Origin: Saccostrea cucullata
Taxonomy: Eukaryota
DNA: 64,000 nt
Assembly (NCBI RefSeq): GCF_032062105.1
Contig: NW_026927697.1
Location: 248,001 to 312,000 of the forward strand
Direction of reading: 5' to 3'
Numbering within the stretch: the stretch's first letter is position 1; each line of letters begins with the position of its first letter. The notes beneath the pieces were generated by a model that saw nothing but the letters and a program-made list of their open reading frames with translations, was not told where the DNA came from and did not search any database. The position numbers and the translations under genes are program-made. This document shows positions 14,733 to 43,786 of the stretch, one piece after another.

Positions 14733-17700
14733 TTATCCTGGATTTCGAATAACATCGAGTATGTAATCATATCCATCTTCAGGACTGTTAGACGTATTGG
14801 TAGACGAATCAGATACAGTTTCATATTCACTTTGAGCTGTCCTTCCTCTAACATCAAAGTAATTTTCAAATCGTCTTCTGTAAATTTAAATGGGGAAATA
14901 AAAACAATCAATTTTGTCCAAGGGTCAATCAATATACTGAAAAATATCTGTTTGTAACGTACGCTTCTTACCTTTTATTTTTACATGCGATTATAAAAAA
15001 TATCAAAGCTAAGAAGGCGAAGATGACTGCCAATGGAGTTATGATGTAGAAGTAAGCATCTGAATTTGAAAATTTTAAATTATAAATGTACATGTAAATT
15101 TAATTCTTTGGAGAAAAAAATACACATTTGCATAAAAATCTTGAAATAACAATTAAAGGTACTTTTATACTAGTTCAAAAATAGGTTAAAGCAGCTGCAT
15201 GTTATGAAGAAAGCAATTTGGAATATTTATGCAAGAACTGTACATAATATCTCACCTGAATCTGACAAGTTACCTGTAGCAATTTTATTTGTTGTTTTGG
15301 ACGGTACAGTGTTAATCATTGTAATGCTCGCTGTTCTTTTTTCAGTTATGTTTACAACAGCATCAGTTGTCATTGTCTTTGATTTAGTAGAAATAGGTTG
15401 ATTCTCTGTCGTCAACACAGACTGTTAAATTGAACATCAGCTGATTGATTGATTGTATGTTGTTTTCTATCGCCTTTTAGAATTTTTACTCATATCGAGA
15501 TATCAACAGATACAGTGATACAGTCTAATTAAGACCTTTACTCGGCACCTTCAACCATTGAGTAGTGATGATTCTATATCGTACCAACATTTACCTTGAC
15601 ATGGGGCCTCGGATTTTAAGATCTCACCCAAAACCCCTGCAACTTTTGCTTCAAATTCTATGAGCTTGATGAAGGAACAGTTGCTACATTGTACCTGATC
15701 TTTTTTTATCGATATATGTCAGATTTTAGTACAAGACATCCTGCTGTATAATTATCATGAATTCTTATAGAGGGTCCTTTCACTTTCTGAGTATGCTTGC
15801 AAATTAATTGACTTTAACATATGAATTGCCGTATATATTCCTATGTTAAAAATTTGATATTATAGTGTGGTCCTATAATACCACGAATGAAGATCTTCAT
15901 TTGAAGAATAGATAAACTTTAAGCTTATATTGTAAATTCAAACTAACTTCTAATATGCGTGTTTTCACAACGCTATAATAATTTTACCCTTGTCCTCCTT
16001 AACAGGAAGATTTTTGATAATGACCATGCAAACTCTGATCTCCTTGTCACTCAGCCGTACCTATGATGATATTTCTTTATTGTCCCGGTGACTAAGAGAT
16101 AAAAATAGTTTGAAATGACTCAAATAAATTTAATCTAAATTTAACTTGGTCATCTTTCTTTGAAAGATGGCTTGGCACATTATTTGGATAAAAATTAATT
16201 CCTTTAACCACAGCAAGTTTGATTGGAACTCAAACACAAAAAACAACAACTGGAATACAAATAGACGGACTCGAGAGAAAATGTGATCAGAAAAAATCAT
16301 GCTTAAAGATTGAGTAAAGAACATACTTCGTCTATTGGCGGTAAAGGCTCAGTAGTTAATATTTCTTTTTCCTTGTCACTGACCGATATTGAATTGAATG
16401 TAATTTCAGCATTATGGGTTGCTTTTGAAGTTAACGGAGTTGTCATTGTTGTATATGATATATCTTCTCCCTCGCAGGACACATTAAGAACCGCAGAAGA
16501 ATCAACTAAAGAGGAAAACGTAATGTAAGCAGCGAATCTTTATCTTAAATTCTGCACTTAAATAAAGCTCCATGAAAGCAAATGTACCAAGGACTATTCA
16601 GTTATATTTGAAAATATAATTAAATTATCTTGTTTTCAAAAAAATATATACACAGGATTTCAGGACAAAAAAATGAAAGAAATTCTAATATTTTTATTGG
16701 TTACAAAATAAAAATGTTATCTTAAACTGCAATTGAATTTTGTACCTGACTCCATAGATATACAGTAACTTGTGTCGTAGGCTAGCTGTGGATGTTCTAT
16801 ATTAATATGAACATCTGATCCATTAATTGGAAGCTGTCTGCCAGTCACAAAGCAGTTCATTGCCATACTAGTGCCATCAGCTTGAATCATTACAACACTC
16901 CCACATCCTGGCCCAGGATTGACGCCGTTGTAGTTTGTGAAATTCAGTGTACTAGGTTTATCACTGGACACTGTACACCCACAATTTGTGTTTCTAGATT
17001 CTTTAGCTCTGGTTCCATCTATGACGACGTGACGTCCAGATATCTTGTTGTTGTAACACAACATAACAACTGTAATATAATGCAGAACCTAAGCGATGTC
17101 AAAATATATTATGTAGGGACTTAGTTATGTAATCACAAATTATGCCCTCAATTTCTCTCTTAAACATATCGGCCATGGAATATATTATTATAGATTGCCA
17201 CTTCCCTTCATCGTAACTAGTAAAAACCTGCGTTTTAAAGTCTGTATGTTGGAAGGTTTTCTTAAACAGCACACACTCCTTCACCAATCAATGGAGGTAT
17301 GCATGTATTACTTCAGATCATTGCTATATTTTACTCTCTTTAAACTTACATCATTCAATTATTCAAGCATTGTAGATATAAGCCAAATATTGTTCTAATA
17401 TGTTTTCTGAATATGTTTAATAAATGCAACCATTGTAAATTTTCGCTCTGCAATTATTTATTGCTGTACGAACAAGTAAAGCAAATTATACATGTAATTA
17501 GCAAATAATCCTATATCCTTGCTTTGTTTCCCTTTATCTGCGAGATGTTTCAATTGGAATTATGTTTCTGTCTAGAATACAATTTCATGGAAATATAATA
17601 AAGTTTTAAAATGTTAATTTCACACCTTTTCGTATTGAAAAAAAGAAAGCATTTCTTGAAGAAAAGTACATGTAATCCGATGCAAAATTTTTTGGGAAGC

Positions 17701-20700
17701 CCTTACCGACAATATTGTCTTCCTGCAAATACTTGCTGCAAGTCTGCAGCAAACTTTGCTGCAAGCTTGCAGCAATGTAGCGAAAGAGAGCATGACAGTC
17801 TATACAAAACTTTGGTGTTTGCAGCAAGTTAGCGGCAAGTCTGCAGCAAGCTTGCTGCAAACATTTTACCATGCAAATGAGGTTTGCTGCAAGTCTGCAT
17901 CAAACATTGAATTTTCCAAATATGGAAACCTTGCTGCAAGCTTGCGGCAAACATTGCTGCAAGCCTGCCGCAAACATTGCTGCAAGCTTGCCGCAAACAT
18001 TGCTGCTAACTTGCAGCAAACAATTTCCTTATGATTTTGGCACATTCTTGTGTACAAGCAGCAAGTTCGCGGAAAGCTTTATTTTGATCTAACCTAAATC
18101 TGTTAAGTGTAGAGAAAATCCACCACATATTTCTGAAATTATGCAATTGTATGAAGTTTTTATAGGCTTCTTTATGTTCCTAGACATAGTTTTCATACTT
18201 TTTGAAAATTAAAGTGCATTATAGCATTGTATATGAACAGAACTTTTAAAATTTTACATACAATTTTAAATTGAATATTACCGTAATTACACAGCTACTA
18301 ATTAATTTGAAAACATTTAACTGATTTAGGTCCATTGATACATTTAAGAAGTATACATATGTGATATTAAAAAGAGGACTGAAATTCATAATAAATATTT
18401 AAGATTTAGATTTGACCTAGCATTTACACCAGTAACTCAAACGTGCTTTTAAGTAATATTCTTTTAAATATCAAAATAAAACAAAACCATTTCTTACCAG
18501 TTAGATATCATGGATGCCAATGAACACCTACATCCGAAGTTTGGCACTTTTAATCATTCAGAATGGTGTGTATTCCTAACAAAATACTGAAACGTGTACA
18601 ACTTCAATTCAAACATTTCAAAATGGGCTGGCAAGTTCTGTGTTTACCTCAGTACAATCTGCATTTCATTGGCTGATTTGACTTGTTTACTATTCTTACG
18701 AACTTCCTGTAAACATTCGAATAATGAAATGTGTCCTGTGAACTTGCTGCGAACATTAAATTGGCATGAAAGTTTCTTACTATGTTCCTGCAAACATGTT
18801 GGGCTGCAATGTTTGCCGCAAGATCGAAGCTACTGGGAATCATCTGCGAATAAGAAAATTTTCTTCCTACGAACAATTTTGTTTGCTGCAAGCTTGCAGT
18901 AGACTTGCTGCAGGCCTGCAGCAAACATATCAGTTGGTAAATGAGATTTATTCAAAATTCACAGAATTACTGTTGAATGTATGAAAATTTCCAATCTGAG
19001 GGATGTGATCGAAGATTTATTTATTATAAATATACATAAACGAATGATGAGTGATTTTCTAAAATCTAAAGATAAAAACATTTTTATCTCAACAAGTAAA
19101 AATTTAAGCTTCTTATCAATTTACCAATTTAATCAAAATTTTAATAATAAAACTGACAATTTTAGACAATGTTTATACTTAATATATACATGTACATATA
19201 TCTTGCAATGTATATTATACAGTAATGGTATTGTGGATCGATCATGTTTTACAATAGTGACATGTAAACAGTGATATTATGATATACAACTGTACATTAT
19301 AGATAAAAAGGGTTTACCACAATGAAGTTTTATTGATTTATTTTCTCGAAAGAAATAATTCTTTTTGATTTATATAGGCATTCCTTAAGTTTTGCCGTAG
19401 TTTCAAGTTTGCTTAACAGGTTACACATTAAGATTTTAAAAAATTAATTTATTAGTTTTTTTTTAATTGCTAAAAAAAAATCTTACTGTTTATTAGATCT
19501 TTTTGATAGGGGATAAAGGCAAATAATAATTTTTTTTATTTCTTTAAAAAATCTATTTATTTAATTATTTTATTTATAATTTCTCCGTATTACATTAAAT
19601 TATTCAAAATTTACATGTATATGAGCTCATCTTCAGCCTGCTTCTTAAATGAATATCAAATATGATGGCCTTTATTAATTAATCTTTCCCAATAATTAGT
19701 CCAAAAACATTTCAAAATTCATAATAGATCATAATTCATATGTTAAAATATCCCTTCTATATTATATTTCTGTTGTTATTCTTTGTCTCATTTTGAGAGA
19801 ATGAAACTACGATTTTTTTTTTTCAATTCGCAATATAATTATGTGGATTTTTATAGTACCTTGTAAATATATATTTTGGCATTCATGGCCTGGAGATGAT
19901 GATTTTACATGAAGAATAGTCACGTATTTACCAAATTTATTTACCAAAACTTTATCTGGAATTGTAAAACAGTGTTAATTAAAACACATAATTGATTAAT
20001 TACATAAAAGACGGTTCAACTGTTCACTCTACTTTTTTAAGAACATATATGTCCGTCAATATGTATTTTTTTTTCATTACATGCATAAACATGTGCATAT
20101 AAGCTGCCATTTTCTATATGCTTCCTCAGCCGCCATCCTGACAATTTATATTGATTTTAAAAAATTATTTATTTTTTTTAATTGCAATCTTACAGTGATA
20201 GGGGAATATTAACAGGATTGTATATGAATCTTCAGCCTGCTTCTTAAATGAATATCAAATAACATGCAAAAATGGCCTCCTACTTTTTTTTTCAACGCAA
20301 TATAATTATGTGGAAAACTTATTATTTGAAAGGATATTCAAATATAACATGAATTCCTTGAACATGTTTTCGAGTGCAACACAAAAGAAAAACAGAAATT
20401 TAACAAATCTCAGGATAAAATTCTAAATATTAAAACGACTGTAATTATTACAAAGAACATTGAAGTCATAATACCAGTTGTAAACAATGGAGTCGCTGTA
20501 TTTATCTCCTCAGTTGTTGAAGTGTAGGAAGTTTTCCTTGTTGTAGATGGTAAAAGATCTCCATCACAAGATACACTTAGTACTGCTGACAAATCAGCTA
20601 AAAGATAGGAAAAAAGTAGTTAAAATGAGGTTTATATTATGAATTAAATCAAAAGTAATGAAATAATGTACGACATATTGATTGAAATTATCCTGAAAAC

Positions 20701-23700
20701 ACGATGCTTTACATTCAACGGTTAATAATTTCTCCTCATTCAGCGTACTTCTGAAGTGTGATACAACCAAGTACTATACAAAGATATATACCTAACTCAT
20801 GTTAATTTAACGTACCTGACTCAATAGATAAACAGTATCTTGTGTCGGAGGCTAGTTGTGGATTTTCGATAAGAATATCAACATCTGATCCATTAATTGG
20901 AAGCTGTCTGCCAGTCACAAAGCAGTTCATTGACATGCTAGTACCACCAGCTAGAACCATTACAGTACTCCCACACCCTATCCCAGGATGGACGCCGTTA
21001 TAGTTGGTAAGGTTCAGTGTACTAGGTTTATCACTGGTGAGTCTACATTTACAGTATGTGGTACTAGAGTCTTTGGCTCTGTATGCGTCAATGACGATAT
21101 TATGTCCAACAATCTGGTAACTGTAGCACATCAGGGCTACTGAAACGATTGAGTATTCGTATTTCATTGCCTGTGTAGAGATGACCAATCTTAACATAAA
21201 ACTCTAAAATGTTCGTCATTTTACCTGGAACCGAGTTCGCTTTGGCTAGTAAGTAACAGGGAGAGTAACAACTCACTGGATCTGAAATTGATTTTAAACT
21301 TAATCTGTTATTAGTTTAAATATTTTATGCAATAATATTATATTCTCTAAATATACAGTAGATTGAGTCTTTTCTAATAAACTTAGTGAAATAAGTATTA
21401 CATTCATATAAATCCTAGATACTAGTACCAATAAATGGCCATATATATAATTTTTTGTTATTTATTTGTGAAAGGTGATGACTTGAAATAAGATAAGAAT
21501 GCCTAGCTAGACTTTTAAAAATTGAAAGAACCTTATTCGGTAATAACCAATATTTGCCCCCCAAAATCAAACTTTGACGGAGAAATATTTAATTTTGTTC
21601 TTAAACAGGGGAATATATGCTGACTTCAAAACACTGAATATTTTCATTAGCAAGGACGTCATATGTTTGTAATGACATCACGAAAATGACGTAAATTTAA
21701 AATTTCCATGATTTGTAAAGAAAAATGTATATTTTACGTCGATATTTTGAGTAAAAATCACCGAGCGCAGATTTGTTCAGGCTTAATATTTTCATATTAT
21801 GTGTAGAATGATAATATCAATAAAATGTATAAATATTATTCCTGAACAAACTTGCGCTCTATAACTCTTAAAGCTAAAAAAATTGTTGAAATTTTGTCCA
21901 TTTTGTCCTCTTTCTAAAAAATGACAAAAAATCGAACTAGTTTATGACGTCATAAAAACAAAAATTGTCAATAAACTACTTTGAAACTATAATATGATCT
22001 GTTAATTTATATTTCTCATACAATTTATAAAATTCAGCACATATCAAGAATTTTTCAAAATTTGACTTTTGTGGGGGCAAAGATATGCAATATACCGCAT
22101 ATAGTTCTTTGGTAGAAAAAATAATTATAATGTTTTATATTTTAAGGAAGCACATAGTTTACCACTTTTATAAGTTAAAAACATGTGAACAAATTCTGGA
22201 GTTTGAGAACAATCACATGAATTACTGAAAAGCACTGTAAATATTCAAAAACTTTTGATGTTATATAAAAAGATTATTTTCGTAATTTTTTAATTGGCTG
22301 CTGAAAGAAGTCACGTGATATAAATCCTCTTTTTTAATGTCGATGCGCAAGCGCTAATGTTGGACTTTTACGAGAAGCACTGACTTTTACAGTTGACGGT
22401 TTACTTGGACATTTAAACTTGTACCATTTACGGAAGTACAGAATTGATAATGCCTAAGAAAACCTTCCTAGTGGTCATAAGTATGGGGTTAGGGGCACTA
22501 ACATGTAAAGACCGGGAGTTGAGGGTAGGGTGGTTGTCGTTTTCTTCAAAGACAGCTTATATGTGCATTAAAATAACCTGTTCTTTTCGTTTAATTAATA
22601 TGTTTATCATGAAAGAGCTACCTTACATTGCCCTAGTGTAAAAGTAAGCCGTCAACTGTAAAAGTAAGCGCTCTTCGTAAAGGTCCATTGATATTGACCT
22701 AGGACACAGAAAATGCATGATCGCGACCTCGCGTGCTCGGTCAATATCACTCTCTGTTTCTTCGGTCAATATTAATTGCCATGAGTCCTTATAACCACAT
22801 ATCGACCTACACTGAAGTCCATAATTGTATAATATACATGCCAATTACTATACAAATCAAAATACAATAAAACCTATCAGATAATCAATTGTAAAAAAAA
22901 ATAGTTTACAATTTCTAAGCATTACTCGAAATATCTCATGTCGGTGTATTATCGTTTGGGTGTTTAATGCTACTTGCAGTAGCAATAGAATCTTAATAAT
23001 ATTGCAGTGTGCATAATCACTAAATCCACAATTAACTTTGTTTGATATTATGTTTAATAAATTTGCTATTTCAGAAATAATACAAAAAATATATTCAGTA
23101 GTTTATAGTTAATTTGTGTGTGTGAAGCAGTTAGCATATCTGGGTTAAATCGTGCCAAAAGCCGGTTAAATACACGGAGAGCTATGAGTCCAGCTGAAAA
23201 TGGTTGGATACATGACCTAGATAAGAATTAAGGACTTAATATGTAAAATTATTCAAATATTAATTGATTCATATTGTAGATTTCCAATGATGTTCATGAT
23301 TTTCCTTAGTTGTTGCTCCTCTCTGTTTCTTAATAAAAGAAAAAAAAATAATTTTGGCCATAAGGATTAATTAATAAACAGTAATGACGATATACACAGT
23401 TAACACATTACCTATGTTGGATATAACCAGAATCTAAGGGTTGGTTAAACAAAGGTTTATTCACACTAAATACTTCCAAGGTTCTGTATACATGTGTACA
23501 TTGTCTTTTACCGAGTCTTTTCGTATACAAAATACATGTTTTTGAAACCAACAAGAATATATGCGCATATCATAGCTCTTACGCTCATTGTATTCCTCGA
23601 CTTGTCAACGGACTTCATTGTTTAGTTATATTGATGATACAAGAAAACATAGATTATGTACATACCAGACGTAAAGATTAGACTACCAATAATCCACAAG

Positions 23701-23723
23701 ATAACATTCCTTATGTCCGCCAT
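14733..23723 (-). CDS. Gene B: type I membrane receptor-like protein with two tandem Cys-rich domains, Thr-rich stalk, TM and Tyr-motif tail (about 487 aa if one gene)
   Basis: Exons 23723-23666, 21281-21225, 21139-20816, 20597-20475, 17069-16746, 16505-16327, 15421-15256, 15059-14972 (TM YFYIITPLAVIFAFLALIFFIIAC), 14877-14733 (tail with SEYETV); all GT-AG and phase-consistent; may instead be two genes. Confidence 0.72.
15442..15690 (-). mobile_element. Degraded copy of the CAAT-tailed SINE
   Basis: Diverged similarity to the body and tail of 760-1112. Confidence 0.7.
17700..18942. mobile_element. Non-autonomous DNA element with GCAGCAAGCTTGCTGC subterminal repeats (CACTA/CMC-like)
   Basis: Dense palindromic CTGCAAG/CTTGCAG repeats at both ends; degenerate termini CCCTTACCGAC / GTTGGTAAATG. 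Confidence 0.6.
21526..22110. mobile_element. MITE
   Basis: About 50-bp imperfect TIRs AAGAAC..ATTCGGTA..ATATTTGCCCCC / GGGGGCAAAGATAT..TACCGCATATAGTTCTT. Confidence 0.65.
22361..22687. mobile_element. MITE
   Basis: Inverted repeats TGGACTTTTACGAG...CTTTTACAGTTGACGG / CCGTCAACTGTAAAAG...CTTCGTAAAGGTCCA. Confidence 0.65.
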
Positions 23724-25110: not shown

Positions 25111-28100
25111 CTATAACATAAAACTTTCACTACCATTAATCGTCACTTTTATAAGAGATTGTGGTGAATCTTGATTACTTCTCTTTGATCTGAAACCAGT
25201 CTGGGAATTATGCTTTTTATTTTGCTGTACACCATTTTGTTTGACCCCTGCCTTAGGATAATGTCTATCCATTTTCAGTCGCTGTGTTTCGGCACTATTT
25301 GCATTAGTTCTAGAGATTGGTTGGTCCTCATAAAAGAAAAACTGAGGTTCCTCTTTCATTTTTTCAAAAGAGCGATTATCATATACAGATTGTTGAGTAT
25401 CAGCTTCATATGAAGACAGGATCCCAACATTCTGCATGGAGCTATTAAAGTCTTGTCTTCCTTTCAAGTCTCTCCGATTTCTATAATTAAATCAAAATAA
25501 AAATAAATTCATAGATAAAATATGGATAAAATTGATTCCTTAAGTTAATTCTAAAGTTTAATACCTTTTGCAAAGAATAACTGCGATGACAAGAATCCCG
25601 AACAGAAGAACTCCACTCACTGGTAAAACAGCGTACAAAACTGAAAATAAACATAGATCCTTTACACAGCGTACAATACTGTAAAGATACAGAGATCCTT
25701 TACACAGCGTACAATACTGTAAAGATACAGAGATACTTTACACAGCGTACAATACTGTAAAGATACAGAGATCCTTTACACAGCGTACAATACTGTAAAG
25801 ATACAGAGATACTTTACACAGCGTACAATACTGTAAAGATACAGAGATACTTTACACAGATACTGTAAAGATACAGAGATCCTTTACACAGCGTACAATA
25901 CTGTAAAGATACAGAGATCCTTTACACAGCGTACAATACTGTAAAGATACAGAGATACTTTACACAGCGTACAATACTGTAAAGATACAGAGATCCTTTA
26001 CACAGCGTACAATACTGTAAAGATACAGAGATACTTTACACAGCGTACAATACTGTAAAGATACAGAGATACTTTACACAGCGTACAATACTGTAAAGAT
26101 ACAGAGATCCTTTACACAGCGTACAATACTGTAAAGATACAGAGATCCTTTACACAGCGTACAATACTGTAAAGATACAGAGATCCTTTACACAGCGTAC
26201 AATACTGTAAAGATACAGAGATACTTTACACAGCGTACAATACTGCAAAGATACAGAGATACTTTACACAGCGTACAATACTGTAAAGATACAGAGATAC
26301 TTTACACAGCGTACAATACTGTAAAGATACAGAGATACTTTACACAGCGTACAATACTGTAAAGATATACATAGCCTTCAAAACTGTAAAGATAAAGGGG
26401 TACGTTTCACAGCATATAAAGTGTAAAAATAATTTGGATAAAAAACACAGCGTCAGTAATGTAAAGAAACAGAGATAATTTACATGGTGTATTTTCTTTA
26501 TCTTCACTCTTAAAAATTATTTTTACTCATATGGAGACGCCACCACTTGCCGGTGTAGAGCTGCACATTTTGTTCTATACTCGGCATTTACGGCCATTGA
26601 GCAAAGCTGCAGGGATATTGGGATGATTTATACAGCATACAAAAGTGAGAAAACGTAGAAAGCTGTTTAAATATTATAGTTTGCAGCTAACTGTAAAGTT
26701 TTACCTAACGTAACGATCTTTTCGGCAGATGCATCCAGCGTAAACAATTCACGTGATTGGTCAATTCAAATTATCAACATTGACACGGAAATATTCTATT
26801 GCACGAGCAACCAATCAAGGATAAGAAGAAAGTTCCAGTCGGAAAGCTTGCGGTTAGGGGACGTGTACAATTTACCTTGAGCGCAGCTGTCAACTAGATC
26901 GTGACGTAACGTGAAACTTTACAGTTAGCTGCAAACTATAATATTAAAAAAGGGATAAGATGCCAGAGCAAACAGAAATGTAACGATACATGCAGTGCTA
27001 ACACATTGTACAACGATGAAAGAAAGTTATTACACCCTACAAATATGTTAACAAACAGGGATAGGTAACATAAAGAAGATACTAGGATGGTTGAAAAACT
27101 GATATAAAAAACTACCAGGAATAGTTTTTATTACATATAATCCTCTACAAATAGAAAATAAATCTCTATATTATGAGAATTATTCTAATTGTGTTAGCTA
27201 TCTGAAGATTCCTGTGTAGTTTAAACCGTGTACAAAACTGTTAAGAAAAGGGGTAGTAAAAACAGTTCACAAAACCGTGAAGATGTGGCATTCTACAACG
27301 ATTATTGTAAACATCAAATGAAACTGCCGGACATTATTCTCCAATAAATCACGAACGTCATCAAAAAATTATCAGATCAGAAACACGTATCAACCTTGAA
27401 CAATTCAATTGCATGTTTGGCTGTAGAATGAAATACTTGTTTAGACCGCACCGATGTGTCGTCATTTGCAGTATAAACACTGTAAATTGCATCAAGTTGC
27501 TGATGAAGGTCGGTTTTTATAGCTAAGCGGGCTATTCCACGGACCTCCCTACACATTTAAACAACGTGATTTTAGTAAAACCGAAACATGATTTTGTTTC
27601 CGCATCTATTCATTAAAACTTATCAATACATATTACGAACAAATTTGTAATTCAAAAAGGCTATATTTAATGCAACGAAAGCTCAAATCGTCTGATTTCC
27701 ATACATAGGTAAGTAAACAAAATTTCGCTCTGGTGTTAAATGGAACAGCGTTATCGAGACATGGTGACCTAATTCATTTCTCTATAGAGGAACCGATCAG
27801 CCGTATTTTAGCATGTTAAGCGATCTTTGTAGAATAGAAATAAAGTCCTTGTTGTCGTGAATGATGCAAGATAACCTCCTCGGTCTCGAAATGTTGTTTT
27901 AAATATATAAGTCTGGGCTAACGAGGATGTTATCCTGCAGCATTCATGAAAACGCGGACCTTATTTCTTAAATATATAATATCAGCAGAGTTGGATATCC
28001 AACTGATCAATTTTAAACATACAGTCAATATGATTCCTGAAAAATATTCAGAAAGGTATTTTACGAATATTATCATAGGGATTGTCTATTATGAGTGAAA

Positions 28101-30356
28101 AAGGAGATAAAGATATGGACCTTTCTTAACGCTTGATAATAATAGAGTCATACAAATGTATTTTCTAATACGAGTACAATAAGCTAAAGATTTCTGAATT
28201 TATTTTTTTTTTCATGTTTACTTATTGAGAATCTTAATTTTAAGTTAAAAATGATTAAATGATATTATGCTGGGGGAAAATAGATGATTAAGTTTTTGAG
28301 AGTACCATTAAAATCTGTAGAATGAACAACTTCCAATGTCAATGGTGGCGTAGTTACAGTCTCCGTCGACATCACTGGAGTCATCGATATGGAATCTGAT
28401 GATGAAGACTGATTTATTTCTGTCGTGGAGGAGTATTGGTTCGTAGTGGAAGCTCTGTCTTTCGCCGTTGTTTGGTATGTTTCTGATGTCACTAAAGTAA
28501 ACTTTTCAGTTGTAGTAAAATTCTGCACATCGACAGATTTTGTTGTTTGGTGTATTTCTGAAGTACTATCATAGTTTATAGTTGTAGTAATTTTCTGTTT
28601 TTCAACAGTTTCCGTCGTTTCTGATCGGTTCTTGATATCAATTGTTGTACTAGCAAGAAAATAATCTGTGGACTTGCTTGCTGTTGGGTTGTCTGTTGAT
28701 ATTACAGGCTCGTTCGATGAAGACGCAATTAAAGTTGTTGACCCTGATACTGTTGACATGGATGTTGGTGCTGTTGTGAATATGGTTGATAAAGCATTGT
28801 TTGATGTGCTCCATTGTTTAGTGTCTTGAAAATTTGTTGAGAGTTCTGTTAGAGATGAAGTAGAAGTTGAGGGAACTCTGAATTCTCCAGGACTGAAGCA
28901 TTGAGCACTGAGTGTTGCTTGCTCTGTAATTAAAGCATGAAGAATATTTCATGGATATATTCTATTGTTATTCTGTATTAAAGTTGTAATTGTTGTATAA
29001 ATCATGTATATGAAACACATTAAATAATATAATAAATGTCAAAATAGAAAGAGGGGAAAGAGAGAAACCAATAGCAACTCTCTTGAATTCTTAAAGAAAA
29101 TACTACAGTCGATCAACTCAATATTTATCTTTTTTTAAACTAGGATTGTTTATAATAACCATTTCCTATTCAGTACATAGGAATCTTGAACAGAGCATGG
29201 CTCTTACAACAATTAGATATAAAATGACGTAGGTATTAATAATGCACTTTATTTTACTATGTATGATTTGATTCAAAAACATTTAACATAAACGCAAAAT
29301 TCATTCCTGTATTAACAAAAGAAATTATTTTATTGCCTGATCCTTTCCTGGTGTGCTTACCGAATCTCAATGAGAAAAGGAAACAGAACCCAGTGGACCA
29401 GGTCTGTGATATATTGCTTAGCGTTAGAGTGATACTAGAGTGCCTGGGTAAGTGATACTCCGTATCCACGACGTGGTGACAATGGATGTCACGGATCTCT
29501 TCCTGATTATTGTTTGACAGTTTTACTTTCAGTCCACAGTTGGCTGTCGGTAATAGAGAGGTCTCCTGCTTCATGTAGAGTACGGAGGTATTGTATGTAC
29601 TCAATACCTTGATCTCACACATGCAATGACTTGATACGCTCTCATCACGGGGAAGGTATGCATCAAGAATTAAAAAGGTATTTGATTCTTTCATGTTGTC
29701 TGTGCAAAATGATAGAACTGCAAAGAAGGTAAAAAATGTAATTAAAGAAAAATATTTATACATCTGCCACCATGACTTAGAAGCATACATGTTTATCGAC
29801 TTTAGGTCATAGTTAATTGGCATTGAATTTATATTAAATGCCTTCCTGGTTCGTGACAATTACCTTACCTGGTAAAGACCTCTCCTGTGCAAGTCCCTGG
29901 CATCTGTTTTCATTTGTATTCCCTAATTTACCTATGGAAACGAAGTAAAATAACGTAGTCAGTGGTATCAATATCTCTTTCCAATTAGACACAAGATTTA
30001 AATAATCAAGAAATTGTGTCAAACAACCGACATACATGTAAAAAGTGCGTAAGTGTTATCATATGTAATGACATGATTCACACCGAAATATGAACAAGTA
30101 ATTATGATACATGTAACAGTCATATCTTCTACAGGTTTAAACATTTGGATGCCAACTATTTCTTTTCAATTATTCACCAATTTTAAATCTTCTTGTTAAA
30201 TATAACACGATTTAAAAACATTTTTTCTATAGGACAAGATATGTAAAAAATGGTAGTCTAAAGAATATTGAAACGAGAATCCCAATAAGTACTGATGTAC
30301 TTACCGTAAGTGAGGAGAAGGCAGATTACTGTCCACCCTCTGACTTTGGTAGCCAT
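25111..30356 (-). CDS. Gene C: type I membrane receptor-like protein (Cys-rich domain, mucin stalk, TM, tail), about 508 aa
   Basis: Exons 30356-30305 (MATKVRGWTVICLLLTY), 29922-29869, 29717-29361, 28923-28306, 25640-25565 (TM), 25480-25111; total 1527 nt, in frame. Confidence 0.8.
25655..26370. repeat. 38-bp minisatellite, about 19 copies
   Basis: Unit CAGCGTACAATACTGTAAAGATACAGAGATMCTTTACA; one internally deleted unit; degenerate copies continue to about 26490. Confidence 0.95.
26677..26938. mobile_element. hAT-like MITE
   Basis: TIR TAGTTTGCAGCTAACTGTAAAGTTT; 8-bp flanks AAATATTA/TAATATTA (7/8 match). Confidence 0.75.
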
Positions 30357-31748: not shown

Positions 31749-34700
31749 CTAGAAATAAATATCAGGTCCGTTTTGAGTGCCTTTATTGACAACAGCGTAC
31801 TTTGGAATATTTCCACTCGCCCGGTAATCTTTCACATTATATCTAACAAATGGTCCTTCTGTTAAGTTGTGGGGTTGTACGTGGGATTCTACATCATCTA
31901 AGGTAGTGTTTGATAAAACAATACCATCTATTTCAATTTCCTCGGGAATTTTCGTAAACTCTGCATTAATGTCAGGTCCCTCGTCATAAGCATCATAACC
32001 AAAGTTTGTTTCTCCCATGGATGGATATTTATCAATGGAGATGTTCTCATTATCTTTAGGATACTTTATCTCTCGGCTTCTGGAATACAAAGAAAATACA
32101 ATCTGAGGCAAATGTTTGGAGTTCTTAATAAGTTAAATATAGATAATCAAGACTTCGACGAAAACTCATCGTGTCAGGTGTGTAAATTTTTAATATTCGG
32201 CGTATTTGAAATTTCTGAAACATTTATACCTACCTTTGGCATTTGATGAAGGCAAAAACCAATACAACGAGAAGTATTATTCCAAGTAATATTGCTGGAA
32301 TTATTCCACTCCCTAAAAATTTAAAACGTTCATAAGATAACAAAGATATTTTTAAATATTTGTACAATTATGGCTCTCTCTATTATTTACCCTATTACGT
32401 AATGAAAGGTTTCGAGAGAACTGCAAGCACAAAATGCAGTGAAATGTTTTATCTCCTGTCGTTATCCTTTTATTTTCACACTTTTATCAATTGTTTAGCA
32501 TACTCTTTAACTTCTCTGAAATGTTTGGTTGTCTGTAAATCTGTGATTAATAATTGAGATTATATCAGTCAATGTCTTCATTTACATAGAAGAATTTTTG
32601 AAATGTTAATATTATATCCATACGTACATGGAGTCCCCCGCTCCGGAAGGGGTTTACTAGTTGTTACAAATGGCGTCGTTCTCTTTGTAGTGGTACTCTG
32701 GATACCGTCGGTAGATGTCAATATTGCTGATGATGACGTTGACGTCACTGGTTGTTTTGACACCTGCTCAGTAGTTGTTGAGGTCAAGTTTTGCGTTGTT
32801 ACAGACTTTGAAGTTTGAGATCGAGCTGTTGTCGAGTCTGCCACGTCTTTCGTTGTTGTGAGAGCTGGGGTTTGAGTGGGAGCAGTTGATGATTCTATGA
32901 CGTTATTTCCAGTGGTGGACTCTGGCCTATCCTTAGTTACGTCATTGTCAGTGGTCTTGTCTTCAGTGGTTGTATCTATTTCTGTGGTAAGACCACTAGT
33001 GACAATATTTGATGTAGTGGTTAAAATTTCAGATGTGGTCACTGTCTGGAATGAAGATGAAGTTGTCACAGTGTCTATTGAAGTAGCTGCCGTTGTCATT
33101 AAAGCTCCAGTTGTTGCTGCCTGGGATGACGCGGGTAAGGTTTGAGAAGCTGTTGTTGAGAGTGATGAGGTGCTTTCTTCTGTTGGAACTGACGATTGAG
33201 TTGATGTTGATAGACTTTGTGAGGCGGTTGATGTTGTGGTTGTAATTTGTGCTGTTGTTATAGGTGATGACAGACTTGTGTCCGTGGTTGTCTGACTTCC
33301 AGTTGTCAGGGAAGATGAAGAAGTCTCTTCCTGCTCGGTTGTTGGAGGAAATAGTGTTGTTGTTGAAGAAGGTAAAGTGTCTCCTTCACAAGAGATGTTT
33401 AGCATGGCAGATGAATCAGCTTTAAAAACATAAAAAATATCTTCAGTGCAGTTCACAAGTATATATATTACCATAACTTGTCAATATGTATTAAAGCCTT
33501 ATCATTATTTAAAGTGAAGTATATAGATTTGAGAAGTGAAGCATATAGACGTGTTTTCATATTGTATTTTATGTTATAACTTTAATAAATGAAGCACAGG
33601 TCTCATACAAATGTTTTAGCCGTTTCATTGAAAAGATTTTGTGGAATTCTAATGTTTACCTGATTCAACAGATATACAGTAACTTGTGTCGGAGGTTAGC
33701 CGTGGATCCTCTAGATTAATTTTAACATCTGACCCATTAATTTGAAGCTGCTTGTCAGTCACAAAACAGTTCATTGAAAAACTTGTACCATCAGCTTGAA
33801 CTATTACAGAACTCCCACACCCTTTCTCAGGATGGACGCCGTTGTAGTTTGTGAAGTTCAGTGTATTAGGTTTATCACTGGACACTGTACATAGACAGGT
33901 TGTGGTACTAGATTCTTTGGCTCTGTAAGCGTCTATGACGACGTGACGCCCTAATATCTGGTTGTTGTAACATAAAAGGGCAACTGGAAAATACGTAAAC
34001 ATTTATGTCAAAATCAATGGGGAAAATATTTGTTTTATCAGTAGTTAATTTAATTTTAGTTATAACAAGTCATTTGAATGAATAAAAAAAATTATGTAAT
34101 ATCGTGTAACAAGTTGGTTAGCCACATATTTAGGTCTTTTAAAATATGCTCAATCAATTTGAAGCCAATTTTAGAGGAAAAATTGTGTTATTGTCTACAC
34201 TGAAATTAAATTATATATATATATGAGAATGAGGCTTATTTGTACCTATGTTGTACGATACAATATAACTTAGGCCAGTTCATGCGGCGAAGCGGTTTAT
34301 AAAGCGTAAACTGATCCTAGTTAGGTATAGGTTCAAATAAGCTTCATTCCTTAAATGTTTGGAAGCTCCATCAAATCAAAATAAAAGTTTGCATTTTACC
34401 TGGAATTGAGTTTGTCTTTGCCATATTATAACAGGGGGAGTAACTCCTCGCAAAGCCTAAAATTAGAAATTTTGATGTTATTTTAAGATCTTGTTTACAG
34501 TGTGCTTTATTCATTTCTACATGTGCAGTTTTCTTTTAGTAATGCATTTGTTGTTATATTTCTATGATTTGCAGAGAGGATGGTTATGAAATTATTAATT
34601 GCATAACTTTTATTTGATTTTTTTTTTAAAAAAGCACATCAGAACATCCGTGTACAGATGAATATTATTAAACAATAATTATTTAGATTACTTTGCAAAT

Positions 34701-36265
34701 ATTAATGGTACATGAACAATGTAATTCAATCTGTATGCACAAATCTATTAAAGTGACGCATGCTAGTAACTTCGATTCTAAACATTTTAGGCCTAGATCA
34801 ATTAATGTTTTAGTCTTGAAATTTAGATTTTTTTTTTTTTGCAGTGAATGATGAAAATATTTCCTCAAATGACTTGTTCTACGTATACTTTATTAGCTAT
34901 GTCATCTTTCTTGATATAGTATATATGTAGAATGTACAAATTTTATTTGAAAAAAATTGTAACGGCTTTTCATAATTTGTATCCTTCTGAGATATCTTAT
35001 ACGAGTACATGTATGTACACCATCTCACTCATTTGCCGAATGTGGACACCAAAATAATACGGGCTTCATTTTAAGCTAACAACGGGATGGGCAAGAGACG
35101 GTTGAGAAGAAGAAAACAGAATTTTTAGGGTGAAGATAGATAGGTATACGTACATGTAAATAGATTGTTTTTCTTTCTTTTCTTAAATATCCTTAGGAAA
35201 CACGACTCTCCTTATCCAAATGGACATTATTTATGTACGATGTGTTTAATTTTTTTACTTCATTGATGTTTTTAAAGGAATGGATTGTTTTGATAAATAC
35301 ATGTATGTGTATATAAAAAGAGTGATGGATTTGTAAATATAATGTAGAAATTCCTGCTTGAAAGACAAGAAAATTTAATGCATGGGTAACATGAGAGTAA
35401 ATGGATCGTCAGTTTATTCACACAAAACTGTAATATAAACCCACAAAATTTATTGAAATCCTTGACACAGACATAAAAAATATGTTACTCATATCTTTAA
35501 TTTATTCAGTATTCGTCTATAAACCTTATTTTCAGAGATACTTAATACAAAGGATTGAATGTTTTATAAAAAGCAATAAATAAGGAAGTACGTTTTTTTG
35601 TCCGTCGATAAATATTATTCCTATGCTTTATACAGGATCCTTATTTATACCTGTGTTTGGCCGACATTAAATTTTATACCCAGCTGATAGTCAATAATTA
35701 CAACAGATGGTACGGTAATCTTGAATAAGGATTACATCGATTTTAGGCTCGTCCTTCTCTGCATTGTCGTTTGTTTATCTCTATTTACATTTTAAGTCCA
35801 AAAACATTACATCTTAAACCCAAATAGCAGCAAAAATTATTTGAAATTATTGTAAATGTCATCAAGCCGATTAGTACGCTCTTCTTTTTTTTTCTGAAAA
35901 AAGCATTATTGAAATATACCTCAAAAATGATAATTTAAATATATCACTGGGGATGTACATGTATTATCTATAAAATGACACTTTAGACGAATCGAAATTG
36001 AATTATATTAAAAACGCTAAATTGAGTACGTTTTGTTTCATGAGTACACGCACATACACACGCAGCAAAAAACCCAAAATATTATGTATACAAAATAAGA
36101 GACAAGTTTTCACTTTTTTTCTGATATTTGATATTGGCTATTTTTTCCTTATGGGACGATATGTGTAAGTTGATCAAGTGGTTAACGAAATTAAAAATAC
36201 AACAAACCTGCAAATATTAATACAGTACTTATGATCCATAATTCCTGGTTTCCTCGTTGCGCCAT
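31749..36265 (-). CDS. Gene D: type I membrane receptor-like protein (Cys-rich domain, long mucin stalk, TM, Tyr tail), about 546 aa
   Basis: Exons 36265-36208, 34456-34400, 33983-33660, 33419-32628, 32312-32234 (TM WSGIIPAILLGIILLVVLVFAFI), 32079-31749 (tail with KYAVVNK); 1641 nt, in frame. Confidence 0.85.
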
Positions 36266-36885: not shown

Positions 36886-37457
36886 TTTCCTCCTATAAAG
36901 TTAGTCTAAGTTTCAACATGTTCAATTTTTTCTCGCTTATAAAAAGAAAATGTCACATGCCTTTTATTCAACTTCTAAATTTAACTTAATTTTCAAAAAA
37001 AAATTATATACATAAAAAGATACTAGCAATAAATTAGCTGATCATAATCAAGAAAAAAAAACCAATTAACTTTGACAAGTTTAAAAGTTTTTATAGTCCT
37101 ACATGCTAAAATGAACTACATGTATAATCTAACGAACTCAAGATTGAGGCAGAAAAAATTTCTTCGAGTTATCTTTCTTGGACGTGATTTCCAATCTTTA
37201 TTGAGACATTCACGGGAAATATTGATCCAGATATCTCGGAAATGTAAGAACTCAATTCCAGGTTACATTTTACTGATAATTTTTATCCTGACTAACAATC
37301 ACATGAACTGTATGACATTTATTGGTTGATGGAATCATTAATTACAAAGAAGTCCCAGAAAATTAAATAATAACGATTCCTGATCTTACCATGCACATCA
37401 AACATGTCCCAAGGTTGTAGGGAGGTTATGCATTTGAGATCGATGGAAATTGTAAAT

Positions 37458-38922: not shown

Positions 38923-41900
38923 TCAATACACTACGTCTGCCTCTGTGGTTTGAAGGTTCTGGTTTGCTGATTTATCTACTTGTGAATACACGGCATCTGA
39001 CGATAATGGCTGATTAATCTGGTTTGCTGATTTATCTACCTGAGAATACAATACGTCAGTGACTGGTATGTTTTCTTTTGCAGATTTATCAACCATGGCG
39101 TACATTGGAGCATCATTGTTGATTGGTTGTCGTACATTATGACGTATATAAGTTCCTTCACTTAGATTGGTTGATACAGACACATTATCTCTGACGTCAT
39201 CAATCACGATCGTGTTTATTTCCGTCGATTTAGTGGACGTTGAGATTTTACTGGTCATTCCTGGGCCAGCATAATAGTCAGGAGAGTATGGTGAATTTGC
39301 TTTGTTTTTAAATGCATATGAATCATTCCCATGAGTATACGTGTTATTGCGTTTTTTCCTGTGGAATACAAAAAATTCAGTCTATGATATTATTATGCAA
39401 TTGTATAGTTTGAGAAGTTGTGTTCCCTTTCTCAAATGATATTTGCAATGGTAACATCTTAAAAAAACACTGTTAAACTAAGGGTGTTATTTTGGCCCCA
39501 CCAAAAGCTTAGGAGTTCTTAATAAAGAAACAAACTATATTATTATTTCCATGTTAAAATGTACATGTATATAATACATAAAATACAAATTGTAGAATTA
39601 CGAGATTTCATTATCAGTACCTTTGGCTGTAACAGATTGCTAAAATTATGGCAACAACAACGATTACACCAGCTCCGATCACCGGAATGATGTAACTCCC
39701 TGTAAATAAAGAAAAGAGAAAATTAATTAAGGTTTCGTCAAAGGTCAACATGTCTAAAAAATTATTTTTACAATAGCTCCAAAACTATGTGTGGTATAAA
39801 GTCAAAACGTTTACAGTTTATAAATATATCATTGATCAATAGATAGAAAGTATCACTTGATAACAAATGTTTTAAAAAAGATTTTTTGGAGAAAAATTGT
39901 ATCAGAAAATGTGCATATTTTTAAAAAATGCACCTGCTTAATTCATTCTGGCCTTTTTGTGAAAACCATCATTGCAGAAATAATATATGTTTATCATTGA
40001 AGGGCAAGTAGGACGTGAATGGTCTCTGAAAGGCTGTTATTGAAAGCATGACATGTATAAAGTCAAGACCCCTATAGAATCCGCCATTTGCAATGTACTT
40101 TCACTTTCAAGTCTTAACATTTGGACAAAATAAACAGGGAAAACAACTTTCCAGAGTCCAACTTGCCCTTCATTAATAAACATATTTTGTTTCTGCAATG
40201 ATGGTTTTCATTCAGAGGAATTAATATGGTGTATTTTTTGAAAATATATGCATTTTTAAGAAGAATTTTTCTCAATTATTATTTTTTCCAAGTATTTTTT
40301 TTATCAAGTGATACTTTCTATCTGTTAATCAATGAAAAATTGATAAACTGTAAAATTTTAACTTTATACCTCATATAGTTTTGGGGCTATTGTAAAAATA
40401 AATTTTTGAGCATGTTGACCTTTGACGAAACCTTAAGTACATGTATACATGTATATCAATTGCAAGTTTTTAATTTTCCTTCTCATAGGCAGTTTTGAGT
40501 TTGTTAGTATACAAAGCTTACATTACATGTTCGGCTTTATTATTATGCTCTAGCTGTATAATTATATGTAATTAATTGATAACATTTCAGTTTCTTTTCC
40601 GTAGATCTAAGACCATACGGTACATCTATAAACAGTATAAGTTGAGCATAATTTCATTTTGAATAACTATTAAATAAATAATTTCAAAAAATAAATCTTA
40701 ACTAATCAGTATGCATCTCACCAAAATGACTCTTTTTTTTATCTTTATTCAATCGGCGTTTAGCAAAGCCCTTGCATATTGGACAACCTTTTCCCGACTG
40801 GTTGATGGGCAAAACTTCACACCTACAGTATGCGACTTATAAACCAGTAGTAAATGTGTCTCTACTGAAATTAAATGTTAACACCAACGACTAAATATAT
40901 TTCTTTGTTTAAATCTATATAAGGGTTTGCATAGAGTTGAATACCTACCGTATATATATATAAAGATTAGTGGTTAAAAAGGTATTAATAATATGTAAAA
41001 GTTGTAAATAAGTGTACTGTAATTTGATTGCACGGCGGTTTGTCAAGTCTCCTGCCTATTACTAGCGAATACGCAGTTACCCGTTGTCATGTACATTTTG
41101 TTAATTTTCAGCTTATCAGTATCCAGGAATATGGTCAACGAACACAACTGATGAAAAAAAAAACGAAGGATAGCTCAAAATCTTACGCAATGTGAAAAGA
41201 ATCAGTTTGGCGAGAGGCATACCATAGAAGATCATGCATTGTTGTCTTACATTCAGAAGTCGAGGCAACTGACTCTCCTGTATTAGCTTCTTTCGTCGTT
41301 GTTAAACCAGATGTACGCTTAGTTGTGGACTGTGTTGTTTTCTCTGCTGTAGTCTGTTTCTGTGTGGTCGTAGATTGTGTTGATACTTGTGGAGATGTGG
41401 TTGTACTACTTGTTGTTGTTACTGTTGAAGTTGACGTTGGTTTTGTTGTCGTTGACGTTGGTTTCGTTGTCGTTGACGTTGGTTTTGTTGTCGAGGTTGA
41501 TGATGTAGTCGCTGTAGTTGTTGTTGGAGCTAATGTTGTTGTTGTTGTAGCTAATGTTGTCGTTGTAGGTCTGGCAGTAGTTGTTGATGTTGTGCTCTGT
41601 GTTGTTGTTGTGGTTGTTGTCCTCGATAAGGTCGTAGTTGTTGTGCTTTGTGTTGTAGAAGTTGATGACGACATGCCGGGAATGTCTCCCTCACAGTTCA
41701 AACTAAGTGTTGCGTCTGCGTTGTCTTCATTGAAATCAGGTAAAATAATTTTTGAATACCTTTTTACCATTGTATAATTTGGAAGACGTGCATTCTTAAA
41801 TCTAATACAGTATTGTTCATGCATTTTTTAAGTGCAAAGATAAATGGTTTTTTTTTTCTAATCAAGAATCGCAGTGAAGGATATGGAGATAACAATGATC

Positions 41901-43786
41901 AGTATTCAATATCAATGTCCATAAAATTAAATTCAATATTCTATGAAAAAAATACAAATGTAATCAGTAAAAAAAAAAGAAAAGAAAATTTGTTTTTACC
42001 TGGCGATAACATTATACAATAGTTGGCATCGTATGAATAGGGTGGTTTTTCAAAGGAGAATGACATTGTTTCTTGAGGAGTTATGCTGAGACCTCCACCA
42101 ATAAAACAATTCATAGAAATTCCGGACTCCGTAGAAGTTCTGACAACAATACTGCTGGAACAGAACTGTGAAGTGGGTTGTAGTTGATTTAATGGTGCAA
42201 AGTTGACTTTTGTACTGTGTGTCGTAGTAACAGTACATTTACAAACTGATACGGAGGAGTGATGTGCATCGAAGGCGTTCAGTACAACTCTATTTCCAGT
42301 TCCTGATGTACTGTAACAAAGGGATGCTCCTGTATATCAAAATTAAAAAAATACTTAGTGATATAAAAAAGCTACATTGGAACATTAATATATACAAAGT
42401 TAACATATCTGTATTAGATTTATTTATAAACCCTGTAAGACAAACAATTCTATTATGGTTTAGATTAATTACCAGGTAAAGAATACTGTGTCATGGCCAT
42501 CTGGCATGCTGTCTCACCTTTAACAGGGCCTGCAAATTTAATAAATAATTATTGAATACATGACTTCCTTCAAAGATGATTAATCTCTAAATATTGTACC
42601 AAACATGACTGCATTGGTAAGGGTAAGCATATACATGTAGCAGTTTCCTCAAATCAATGCCATTCGGCCCATTTACTCAAATCAAAGACATTGATTGACT
42701 GCGTTTGTAGTGATGTTAGATTAATGGTTTTATATTTGTTTATTAATAATATACAAATGGGGTACGCAAGTTTTCGAATATTTTTTTTTTAAAGTTATGA
42801 TTATTAGTAGCTTTATTTATGGTCACTTTTTTTTATTACATGTGCTATTCCAGATGACATCATGTGTTGATGCATTCCTCCTTCCTTTCATTCTTCGTTA
42901 GAGATCAGCTGATGTATACAATACTGCTTGCTTTCAGGTCTATTATGAATGCTGTAGTCAATGACTGATATCTGATATTGTAATTATTAATTAAAGCAAG
43001 ATTCACACGTCCTACTCTATGATTTAAGATTGCTCCATCATAGTAAAAATGGCAAATGGAGGAAGATGTCATGTTTAACCTATTTCTATAAAGACCCTTT
43101 CCCCGTCTGAAATTTATTATACACGGGCTATTTGTTAAGTCAGGTAATTTCCGATTTATCTGATACAGGAGGCGTCAAGTCATTGATGGCTTTATTTCCA
43201 ATCACCCAGCCGTAGTCAGAAATTCTTGTTAATGTGCTGAAAACACCCTAGGCCACATGTAAAGGTCATATACATGTATAAAAAAGTTAACATTTTTGTC
43301 AAGTTGAAAATAAATATGCTTTATTCAATGAAGTGACTTTGAAATTCATTAGCGTCTTCATTTTTTTTAAATTAAGCTTATTTTATGTTATTGTTCTGTA
43401 CTATCAACTTCTTTATGATTCATCTATAAAATCTATAAACTATTTAAAATTTTGTCATTTTGGATTTTGAAATACTTGGCACTCTAAAAGATTGGTTGTT
43501 AAAACAAATCCATCTAAGAACAAATTGTCAGCATATTTGAATACAAAACAGCTTTATCATCACATCTTTGAAAATCATTCAAGTTGGTAATGCAGGTACA
43601 TGATTACAGTTGAGGAGACCCGGTAGTTTAATTCATACATGTATCTCAAATTCAGAAGAAAAATATTAAAAATAATTAACACAAAATCACAATCTTACCT
43701 AGGAAAGTAAACAGGATCCAAAACATACAAAAAATCATGTCTGTCGTCCGCCGATTAAAGAATGGGACATACCCGCCATTCGTCAT
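38923..43786 (-). CDS. Gene E: type I membrane receptor-like protein with ITIM-like tail, about 487 aa
   Basis: Exons 43786-43699, 42529-42473, 42329-42000, 41724-41251, 39699-39621 (TM WSYIIPVIGAGVIVVVAIILAIC), 39358-38923 (MYAMVDK, VLYSQVDK, AVYSQVDK); 1464 nt, in frame. Confidence 0.85.
39731..40432. mobile_element. Foldback MITE with TTAA TSD (Kolobok-like)
   Basis: About 280-bp imperfect TIRs starting GGTTTCGTCAAAGGTCAACATG; TTAA on both sides. Confidence 0.85.

What the first reader, a model, noticed from the sequence alone, without database searches (positions are those of the whole stretch)
14733..43786. Tandem cluster of uncharacterised mucin-stalk receptors with an 8-Cys ectodomain and ITIM-like tails
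Seen: four head-to-tail minus-strand genes share one exon plan. It runs signal exon (phase 1), 54-57-nt exon with a Cys, 324-357-nt exon with six conserved Cys (LC, CxC, C, C, YC/FC), a stalk exon starting with a Cys (xCEG-like) followed by Thr/Ser, a 76-88-nt TM exon ending in phase 2, and a Tyr-rich tail. Tails contain canonical (S/V)xYxxV motifs (SEYETV in B, VLYSQV in E) and YxxVxK motifs (YAVVNK, YAMVDK). Established: a recognition domain on a mucin stalk with inhibitory tyrosine motifs is the layout of vertebrate TIM/CD300-type receptors, which use Ig domains. Inference: this is a diversifying invertebrate cell-surface receptor family (immune, allorecognition or gamete recognition) built on a non-Ig domain that I cannot assign to a named family.
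Basis: partly seen in the sequence, partly recalled or inferred. Interest (0 to 1): 0.85.

Follow-up and report, generated by a model that had tools for sequence, protein, structure and literature searches.

The report
Oyster CUB-like mucin-stalk receptor cluster
Four neighbouring oyster genes encode unnamed cell-surface proteins with a highly diverged CUB-fold head on a mucin stalk and a tyrosine-signalling tail; in related oysters the head is unusually variable between haplotypes, which makes the cluster a candidate recognition (immune or self/non-self) locus, although no ligand or function is shown.

Summary
The gene cluster is real. The genome is Saccostrea cucullata. Four minus-strand genes (E, D, C, B) share the exon plan, but there are five head exons: B has two. 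NCBI's model of D has the same length as mine. The head has no Pfam or PDB sequence match. Two confident AlphaFold models (pLDDT 96, 86) match CUB domains best (Z 7-9, rmsd about 3 Å), so it is a divergent CUB-fold domain, not Ig and not a new fold. The family spans oysters, mussels, scallops and pearl oysters; gene order E-D-C is conserved. The ITIM claim is weak: 2 seen, 1 expected by chance, none in C. The real tail signal is Y-[A/S]-x-V-[N/D]-K, which resembles the Csk site of PAG/Cbp, plus hydrophobic PDZ-like C-termini. In Crassostrea-type sequence data the heads form dozens of variants (median 63-75% identity), with mosaic signal for C and E heads. At matching positions the C head exon is about three times as divergent as distant flanks. 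This resembles snail PTC and Hydractinia Alr loci. Best reading: polymorphic cell-surface recognition receptors, some damping Src kinases through Csk. Ligand and function are untested. The scan noted other CUB-stalk clusters elsewhere in this genome (not checked).

The parts
43699..43786 (-). Gene E exon 1 (signal peptide; alternative ATG at 43738)
   Evidence: orthologue P0003 (S. echinata) starts at the same place
42473..42529 (-). Gene E exon 2 (57 nt, Cys1, N-terminal helix of the head)
   Evidence: helix H4-11 in the model of the D head
42000..42329 (-). Gene E head exon (CUB-like beta-sandwich, Cys2-7, phase 1-1)
41251..41715 (-). Gene E stalk exon (Cys8, then 64% Ser+Thr)
39621..39699 (-). 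Gene E transmembrane exon
38923..39358 (-). Gene E tail: YAMVDK, two YSQVDK (one inside VLYSQV), C-terminus DVVY
36208..36265 (-). Gene D exon 1 (signal peptide)
   Evidence: NCBI model P0071
34400..34456 (-). Gene D exon 2 (Cys1)
33660..33983 (-). Gene D head exon (CUB-like fold)
   Evidence: AF2 pLDDT 96; top 12 structural hits all contain CUB domains
32628..33419 (-). Gene D stalk exon (Cys8, 49% Ser+Thr)
32234..32312 (-). Gene D transmembrane exon
31749..32079 (-). Gene D tail: NFGYDAYDE and FVRYNVKDY conserved as far as Crassostrea; YAVVNK conserved only in Saccostrea; C-terminus DIYF
30305..30356 (-). Gene C exon 1 (signal peptide)
29869..29931 (-). Gene C exon 2 (63 nt, Cys1)
29361..29717 (-). 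Gene C head exon (divergent, 16-21% identical to the others; same CUB-like fold); most polymorphic exon between the two haplotigs
28306..28923 (-). Gene C stalk exon (Cys8, 41% Ser+Thr)
25628..26367 (-). 38-bp minisatellite made of copies of gene C's TM-exon acceptor; 19 of these upstream acceptors read into a stop within a few codons
25565..25640 (-). Gene C transmembrane exon
25111..25480 (-). Gene C tail: no ITIM or YxxPhi; conserved C-terminus (ESFML; ERFVL or ERFIL in Crassostrea)
23666..23723 (-). Gene B exon 1 (signal peptide)
21225..21281 (-). Gene B exon 2 (Cys1 plus one extra Cys)
20816..21139 (-). Gene B first head exon (68% identical to D)
   Evidence: NCBI partial model P0001 from the haplotig
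20475..20597 (-). Gene B short stalk exon (Cys8); with the first head exon it forms an in-frame skippable cassette
   Evidence: inference
16746..17069 (-). Gene B second head exon (73% identical to D)
   Evidence: RNA-type contig and donor 16746
16327..16505 (-). Gene B stalk exon a (Cys8, phase 1-0)
15274..15421 (-). Gene B stalk exon b (phase 0-1)
   Evidence: acceptor 15421 seen in a contig joint with GT-AG ends
14972..15059 (-). Gene B transmembrane exon
14733..14877 (-). Gene B tail (47 aa; SEYETV, YFDV, YDYI)
   Evidence: contig over 14702-14871

Best explanation
A bivalve family of type I cell-surface recognition receptors. A single divergent CUB-fold head with 8 Cys is held above the glycocalyx by a Ser/Thr-rich stalk (shown: anatomy and predicted fold; inferred: four disulfides and O-glycosylation). 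The head binds a ligand on another cell or a microbe (inferred from what CUB domains do; the ligand is unknown). In E- and D-type members, phosphorylation of Y-[A/S]-x-V-[N/D]-K would recruit Csk through its SH2 domain and damp Src-family signalling, while the hydrophobic C-terminus would anchor the receptor to a PDZ scaffold (inferred from motif similarity). The heads, unlike the tails, are kept as old, recombining, highly divergent variants (shown for C-type heads in Crassostrea-type data), as expected for receptors whose ligand varies, most plausibly in host-microbe or self/non-self recognition.
For: Intact gene models and NCBI model agreement for D. CUB-like fold from two models of heads only about 20% identical, and from language-model features. 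YxxVxK 4 against 0.10 in the window; the narrower motif 12 against 0.05 in 25 family tails, from oysters, a mussel and a scallop among the named ones. The Csk SH2 site of Cbp/PAG is YSSV (PMC3492796). Hydrophobic-x-hydrophobic C-termini in 14 of 25 tails against about 6% expected. Head diversity: 40 C-type, 16 D-type and 54 E-type clusters at 90%, median identity 74, 75 and 63%. In same-position pairs the C head exon differs at 12-14% of bases against 4-5% more than 500 bp away (p up to 1e-5). Mosaic signal in C and E heads. The C head is also the most polymorphic exon between the two haplotigs of this genome (5/357 against 6/4837, p=5e-4).
Against: No ligand, tissue or phosphorylation data. 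Fold Z of 7-9 is only moderately above other jelly-rolls (GOLD, collagen-binding domains); the profile comparison with CUB is not significant. YxxVxK is absent from C and B here and from Crassostrea D orthologues. Head dN/dS is about 0.45, with dS raised too, so gene conversion between paralogues could explain the diversity without selection on binding. Variant counts mix species, paralogues and alleles; the species of the SRA runs was not confirmed. D, E and the first B head are identical between the two haplotigs of this genome. RNA support for B is thin and comes from a relative.
Confidence: 0.5

Rival explanations
1. Allorecognition or gamete-recognition locus: heads bind homophilically, or bind a matching partner in an allele-specific way (like Hydractinia Alr1/Alr2, or sperm-egg CUB proteins such as spermadhesins), and a match sends a Csk-mediated inhibitory signal.
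For: Tandem cluster, many mosaic head variants, divergence peak on the head exon; spermadhesin is among the top fold hits; Alr proteins have tens to hundreds of alleles and ITIM/ITAM tails (10.1101/2022.03.04.482883).
Against: No binding or expression data; oysters are solitary; heads are nearly identical between the two haplotigs here; dN/dS below 1.
Confidence: 0.15
2. Housekeeping adhesion or glycocalyx sialomucins (comparable to CD34, podocalyxin, syndecan or glycophorin): the tail links to the cytoskeleton and endocytosis through PDZ and NxxY motifs, and head diversity comes from relaxed constraint plus gene conversion in a tandem array.
For: Old conserved orthogroups and gene order; the most conserved tail elements in D and C are the C-terminus and NFGY, not ITIM or Csk motifs; NxxY enriched (27 against 13); dS raised along with dN.
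Against: The folded, disulfide-bonded head is more divergent than the low-complexity stalk and flanking non-coding DNA in matched pairs, which relaxed constraint alone does not predict.
Confidence: 0.25
3. Classical ITIM/SHP-2 inhibitory immune receptors (functional equivalents of TIM, CD300 or Siglec).
For: SEYETV and VLYSQV fit the ITIM consensus; modest family-wide excess (12 against 6.2, p=0.024); the E orthologue has ITIM-fitting motifs at other tyrosines.
Against: Chance level in the window (p=0.26); not positionally conserved; absent from C and D; no member of the window has the tandem ITIMs usual for SHP-2 activation.
Confidence: 0.1

Closest known systems
CUB-domain proteins (C1s and MASP CUB2, Kremen1, neuropilin a1/a2, spermadhesin, cubilin, NETO2, meteorin N-terminal CUB)
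   Same: Predicted jelly-roll beta-sandwich superposes over about 100 residues at 2.6-3.3 Å for most hits (Z 6.8-9.2); three family cysteines fall in register with CUB Cys2-4; single phase 1-1 exon module.
   Different: No Pfam CUB hit (best is one member at E=0.021 to CUB_CDCP1_1); profile comparison not significant; 4-16% identity; extra N-terminal helix, C-terminal strand and four more Cys; CxC in place of CxW; acidic calcium-site residues not conserved; single head directly on a mucin stalk.
Biomphalaria polymorphic transmembrane clusters PTC1 (GRC) and PTC2 (PMC7494358)
   Same: Molluscan tandem cluster of single-pass membrane genes with very divergent haplotypes and synonymous divergence above non-synonymous.
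   Different: PTC2 genes have no known domains and no homologues outside gastropods according to that paper; homology to this family was not tested here; PTC loci are tied to parasite resistance by mapping, this cluster has no phenotype.
Hydractinia Alr family (10.1101/2022.03.04.482883)
   Same: Clustered type I receptors, polymorphic ectodomain, tyrosine motifs in some tails.
   Different: Alr heads are Ig (V-set, I-set) plus Fn3; here CUB-like plus mucin stalk; allorecognition not shown.
Vertebrate TIM and CD300 receptors
   Same: Head on a mucin stalk, one TM helix, tyrosine tail (from established knowledge).
   Different: Head is not IgV; ITIMs not established; no sequence homology found.
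PAG/Cbp and EPIYA-type Csk recruiters (PMC3492796, PMC3561454, PMC4030455)
   Same: Short pY-[A/S]-x-V site: YSSV in Cbp; YSQV, YSVV, YAVV and YAMV here.
   Different: PAG has almost no ectodomain; the likeness is one short motif, and binding was not tested.

Membership tests
CUB domain | About 110-residue jelly-roll beta-sandwich | tested here: met
   Top 12 hits for the D head and top 11 for the C-type head are CUB-containing chains, Z 6.8-9.2; predicted models, and other jelly-rolls follow within 1-2 Z
CUB domain | Match to Pfam PF00431 or a clan model at the curated cut-off | tested here: not met
   0 of 5 window heads and 0 of 73 family members
CUB domain | Four Cys forming C1-C2 and C3-C4 | tested here: inconclusive
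   Three Cys in register in a non-significant profile alignment (probability 0.4%); disulfide geometry not returned by the tool
CUB domain | Calcium site (Tyr-Glu-Asp-Asp) of the Ca-binding subclass | tested here: not met
   No conserved acidic residues at those positions in the family consensus; the register itself is low confidence
TIM / CD300 | N-terminal IgV domain | tested here: not met
   CUB and other jelly-roll folds lead both structure searches; no Pfam Ig hit at threshold
TIM / CD300 | Mucin stalk, single TM helix and tyrosine tail | tested here: met
ITIM receptors | Conserved [ILVS]xYxx[ILV] above chance | tested here: inconclusive
   Window p=0.26; family p=0.024; not positionally conserved
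ITIM receptors | Phosphorylation-dependent SHP or SHIP binding | not testable with these tools
   needs a pull-down
Csk-recruiting membrane proteins (PAG/Cbp type) | pY-[A/S/T]-x-V site | tested here: met
   Present in E and D here and enriched in the family; absent from B and C
Csk-recruiting membrane proteins (PAG/Cbp type) | Csk SH2 binding | not testable with these tools
   needs a pull-down
PTC / Alr-like polymorphic recognition cluster | Tandem single-pass membrane genes | tested here: met
PTC / Alr-like polymorphic recognition cluster | Extreme allelic divergence of the ectodomain within one species | tested here: inconclusive
   Same-position C heads 78-80% identical in Crassostrea-type runs, but run species and allele status are not confirmed; only the C head differs between the haplotigs here
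PTC / Alr-like polymorphic recognition cluster | Genetic link to resistance or histocompatibility | not testable with these tools
   no phenotype data

The most novel reading that the evidence does not exclude
The cluster is an oyster self/non-self or pathogen-recognition complex under long-term balancing selection, built on a previously unnamed CUB-derived domain rather than Ig, with allele-specific binding read out through Csk-recruiting tails and a soluble decoy of gene C made from the acceptor minisatellite.
Probability: 0.2. Interest if true: 0.8.

Novelty: new variant of a known kind. Interest (0 to 1): 0.52.

Why it matters
Bivalves lack adaptive immunity, and no histocompatibility-type locus is established for them to my knowledge. 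A compact, syntenic cluster whose folded head is more variable than its own stalk and flanks is a testable candidate for variable recognition in farmed oysters: population genomes and disease-challenge families already exist. It also defines an unnamed bivalve branch of the CUB fold that Pfam misses. If the diversity is only gene conversion among paralogues, it is one more uncharacterised oyster CUB-stalk receptor family.

Tried and rejected
Pfam on heads and tails: nothing at threshold. PDB by sequence profile: nothing below E=0.6. Foldseek PDB: no E below 0.001; spermadhesin had the best TM-score, 0.49/0.59. ESM Atlas shape search: uninformative. Profile comparison with oyster CUB domains: not significant. 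Ig assignment rejected: a UniRef 'Ig-like' name on one scallop member is not backed by fold or Pfam. A fifth gene between B's two heads rejected: there is only one signal exon, one exon 2 and one TM/tail, and the haplotig's different intron showed no such exons on reading. A candidate 31-nt exon at 16061-16091 rejected (stop or wrong phase). Attempts to confirm the species of the SRR6063xxx, SRR3274xx and SRR14864xxx runs from papers failed. Two literature searches (oyster + CUB + ITIM; Crassostrea + allorecognition) found no description of this family; the library is incomplete. Spliced models were not sent to any search tool: exons were searched by reference, and full heads through database-returned proteins.
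Full report
Origin and observation. The window is AT-rich animal DNA. Database proteins encoded on contigs of 321,477 and 34,175 bases, the lengths of this contig and of its haplotig, are named Saccostrea cucullata. I rebuilt the genes from splice sites by coordinate. NCBI's model of D (546 aa) has the length and head sequence of mine. Heads are 67-73% identical within D and B, about 30% to E, and 16-21% to C. Spliced models were built only inside scripts for local motif counts; the joined step was left out of all database searches, which used exons by reference or proteins returned by the databases.

The runs come from a relative (mostly 85-95% alike) and coverage is thin; the informative run is only guessed to be RNA. 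One contig joins donor 16746 to acceptor 15421 with GT-AG ends, with room for a diverged 170-nt exon between. Another covers the tail. A third shows the second head preceded by an exon ending in AG, which fits exon 2 better than the 123-nt stalk exon. Inference: the first head plus short stalk is a tandem duplicated, in-frame skippable cassette. B is a young derivative of D. Splicing of E and C was not tested with reads; it rests on open frames and on annotated orthologues.

The head. There is no Pfam, and no PDB sequence, match. A profile search found about 69 relatives at the 50% level (one bacterial-type repeat protein is a false hit). Named ones come from Saccostrea, Crassostrea, Mytilus, three scallops and Pinctada, all annotated 'uncharacterized' or 'mucin-like'. 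AlphaFold models of the D head (pLDDT 96) and of a C-type head (86) show a short helix followed by an all-beta sandwich. In a search of 48,161 chains the top 12 and top 11 hits are CUB-containing proteins (C1s, MASP, Kremen1, spermadhesin, neuropilin, cubilin), Z 6.8-7.9 and 8.1-9.2, about 100 residues at about 3 Å. Language-model features also point to the CUB clan. The profile comparison with oyster CUB domains is not significant but puts three Cys in register. So the head works like a CUB-fold module and probably descends from one, but it fails the sequence test for membership. The disulfide pairing (2-3, 5-6, 4-7, 1-8) is my inference.

The tails. Canonical ITIMs number 2 in the four tails against 0.99 in shuffles (p=0.26), and 12 against 6.2 in 25 family tails (p=0.024). 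VLYSQV is not kept at that tyrosine in the S. echinata orthologue of E, and C has no YxxPhi motif. It is kept in the S. echinata E and D orthologues and recurs in mussel and scallop members. It resembles the Csk SH2 site YSSV of Cbp/PAG (PMC3492796). It is lost in Crassostrea D orthologues, where NFGYDAY, FIRYNVKDY and the C-terminal DVYF are what persist. Fourteen of 25 tails end hydrophobic-x-hydrophobic, a class II PDZ-ligand pattern (assignment from my knowledge).

Evolution. Gene order E-D-C holds in S. echinata, and D-C in C. virginica and in other Crassostrea-type contigs. C, D/B and E form separate supported clades. S. echinata also has a broken second C copy. A balanced search with C, D and E heads returned 104 clusters at 90%; pooled with earlier hits they give 40 C, 16 D and 54 E variants with median identities of 74, 75 and 63%. 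One D-type variant is named Magallana gigas. These sets mix species, paralogues and alleles, and I could not confirm the species of the runs. Two pairs of contigs that align along their length give a cleaner test. In L075 against L086 (both directly behind the D tail) the C head is 78% identical in protein, the D tail 93% and the stalk 92%. The head exon differs at 14% of bases against 4.8% more than 500 bp away, and 11.7% against 4.6% in L089 against L100. dN/dS is about 0.45, with dS raised too, which fits old balanced variants or gene conversion rather than a recent sweep; the snail PTC2 locus shows the same excess of synonymous divergence (PMC7494358). Nearby sites are more compatible than distant ones in C and E heads (p=0.005 and 0.0005; D not significant), a sign of recombination that rate variation could also mimic. 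In this genome the haplotig C10804 is 99-99.6% identical; E, D and first B heads are identical, but the C head has 5 changes within 51 nt against 6 in the other 4,837 coding bases. At least eight further head-like exons lie on other contigs, a lower bound.

Mechanism and verdict. Shown: anatomy, fold class (predicted), motif enrichment, synteny and head-centred divergence. Inferred: ligand binding by the head, Csk recruitment, PDZ anchoring and a recognition role. I put 0.5 on variable recognition receptors with partly Csk-coupled tails, 0.25 on housekeeping adhesion mucins, 0.15 on allo- or gamete recognition and 0.1 on classical ITIM receptors. The layout is a known kind, and other CUB-stalk-TM clusters have been noted in this genome by the scan (unchecked). 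The unnamed CUB-derived domain and its polymorphism make this a new variant that deserves population and binding tests. Interest 0.52.

Noticed in passing
window 25628-26367; L027 12634-13107 and 22602-23152: The 38-bp minisatellite is an amplified copy of gene C's TM-exon acceptor; use of an upstream copy would end the protein after about five codons, giving a soluble form. The same array sits at the same place in both S. echinata C copies and is absent in C. virginica. No RNA test.
   Followed up: partly
window 7693-11850 (+): Tyrosine-recombinase retrotransposon (Ngaro/DIRS type): RT, integrase-family recombinase and GDSL/SGNH hydrolase ORFs, with repeated ends near 7000-7350 and 11830-13150.
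   Followed up: partly
window 57768-59825 (-): Intact 686-aa ORF matching Mutator-like transposase PF20700 (E=6e-70).
   Followed up: partly
window 49887-55299 (-): Series of broken ORFs of a large transposon-like element with no Pfam match at threshold.
   Followed up: no
L022 (G000:C19608): Short contig carrying a copy of gene E's 5' half with frameshifts in the head exon; probably an error-rich third assembly copy, possibly a pseudogene.
   Followed up: no
L009, gene D exon 1 on haplotig C10804: One-base insertion in the signal exon, which makes NCBI's haplotig model (P0002) start later; likely a sequencing error.
   Followed up: partly
window 18280-20313 against L011: The intron between B's two heads differs in structure between haplotigs, with a GC-rich inverted-repeat element present only in the haplotig.
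   Followed up: no
L072 (G000:C13172), L066, L068, L069, L071: More distant head-like exons point to a larger oyster superfamily of this domain.
   Followed up: no
second hit: A rotifer-dominated unnamed cluster scores 0.89 by features, a lead that the domain may occur outside molluscs.
   Followed up: no
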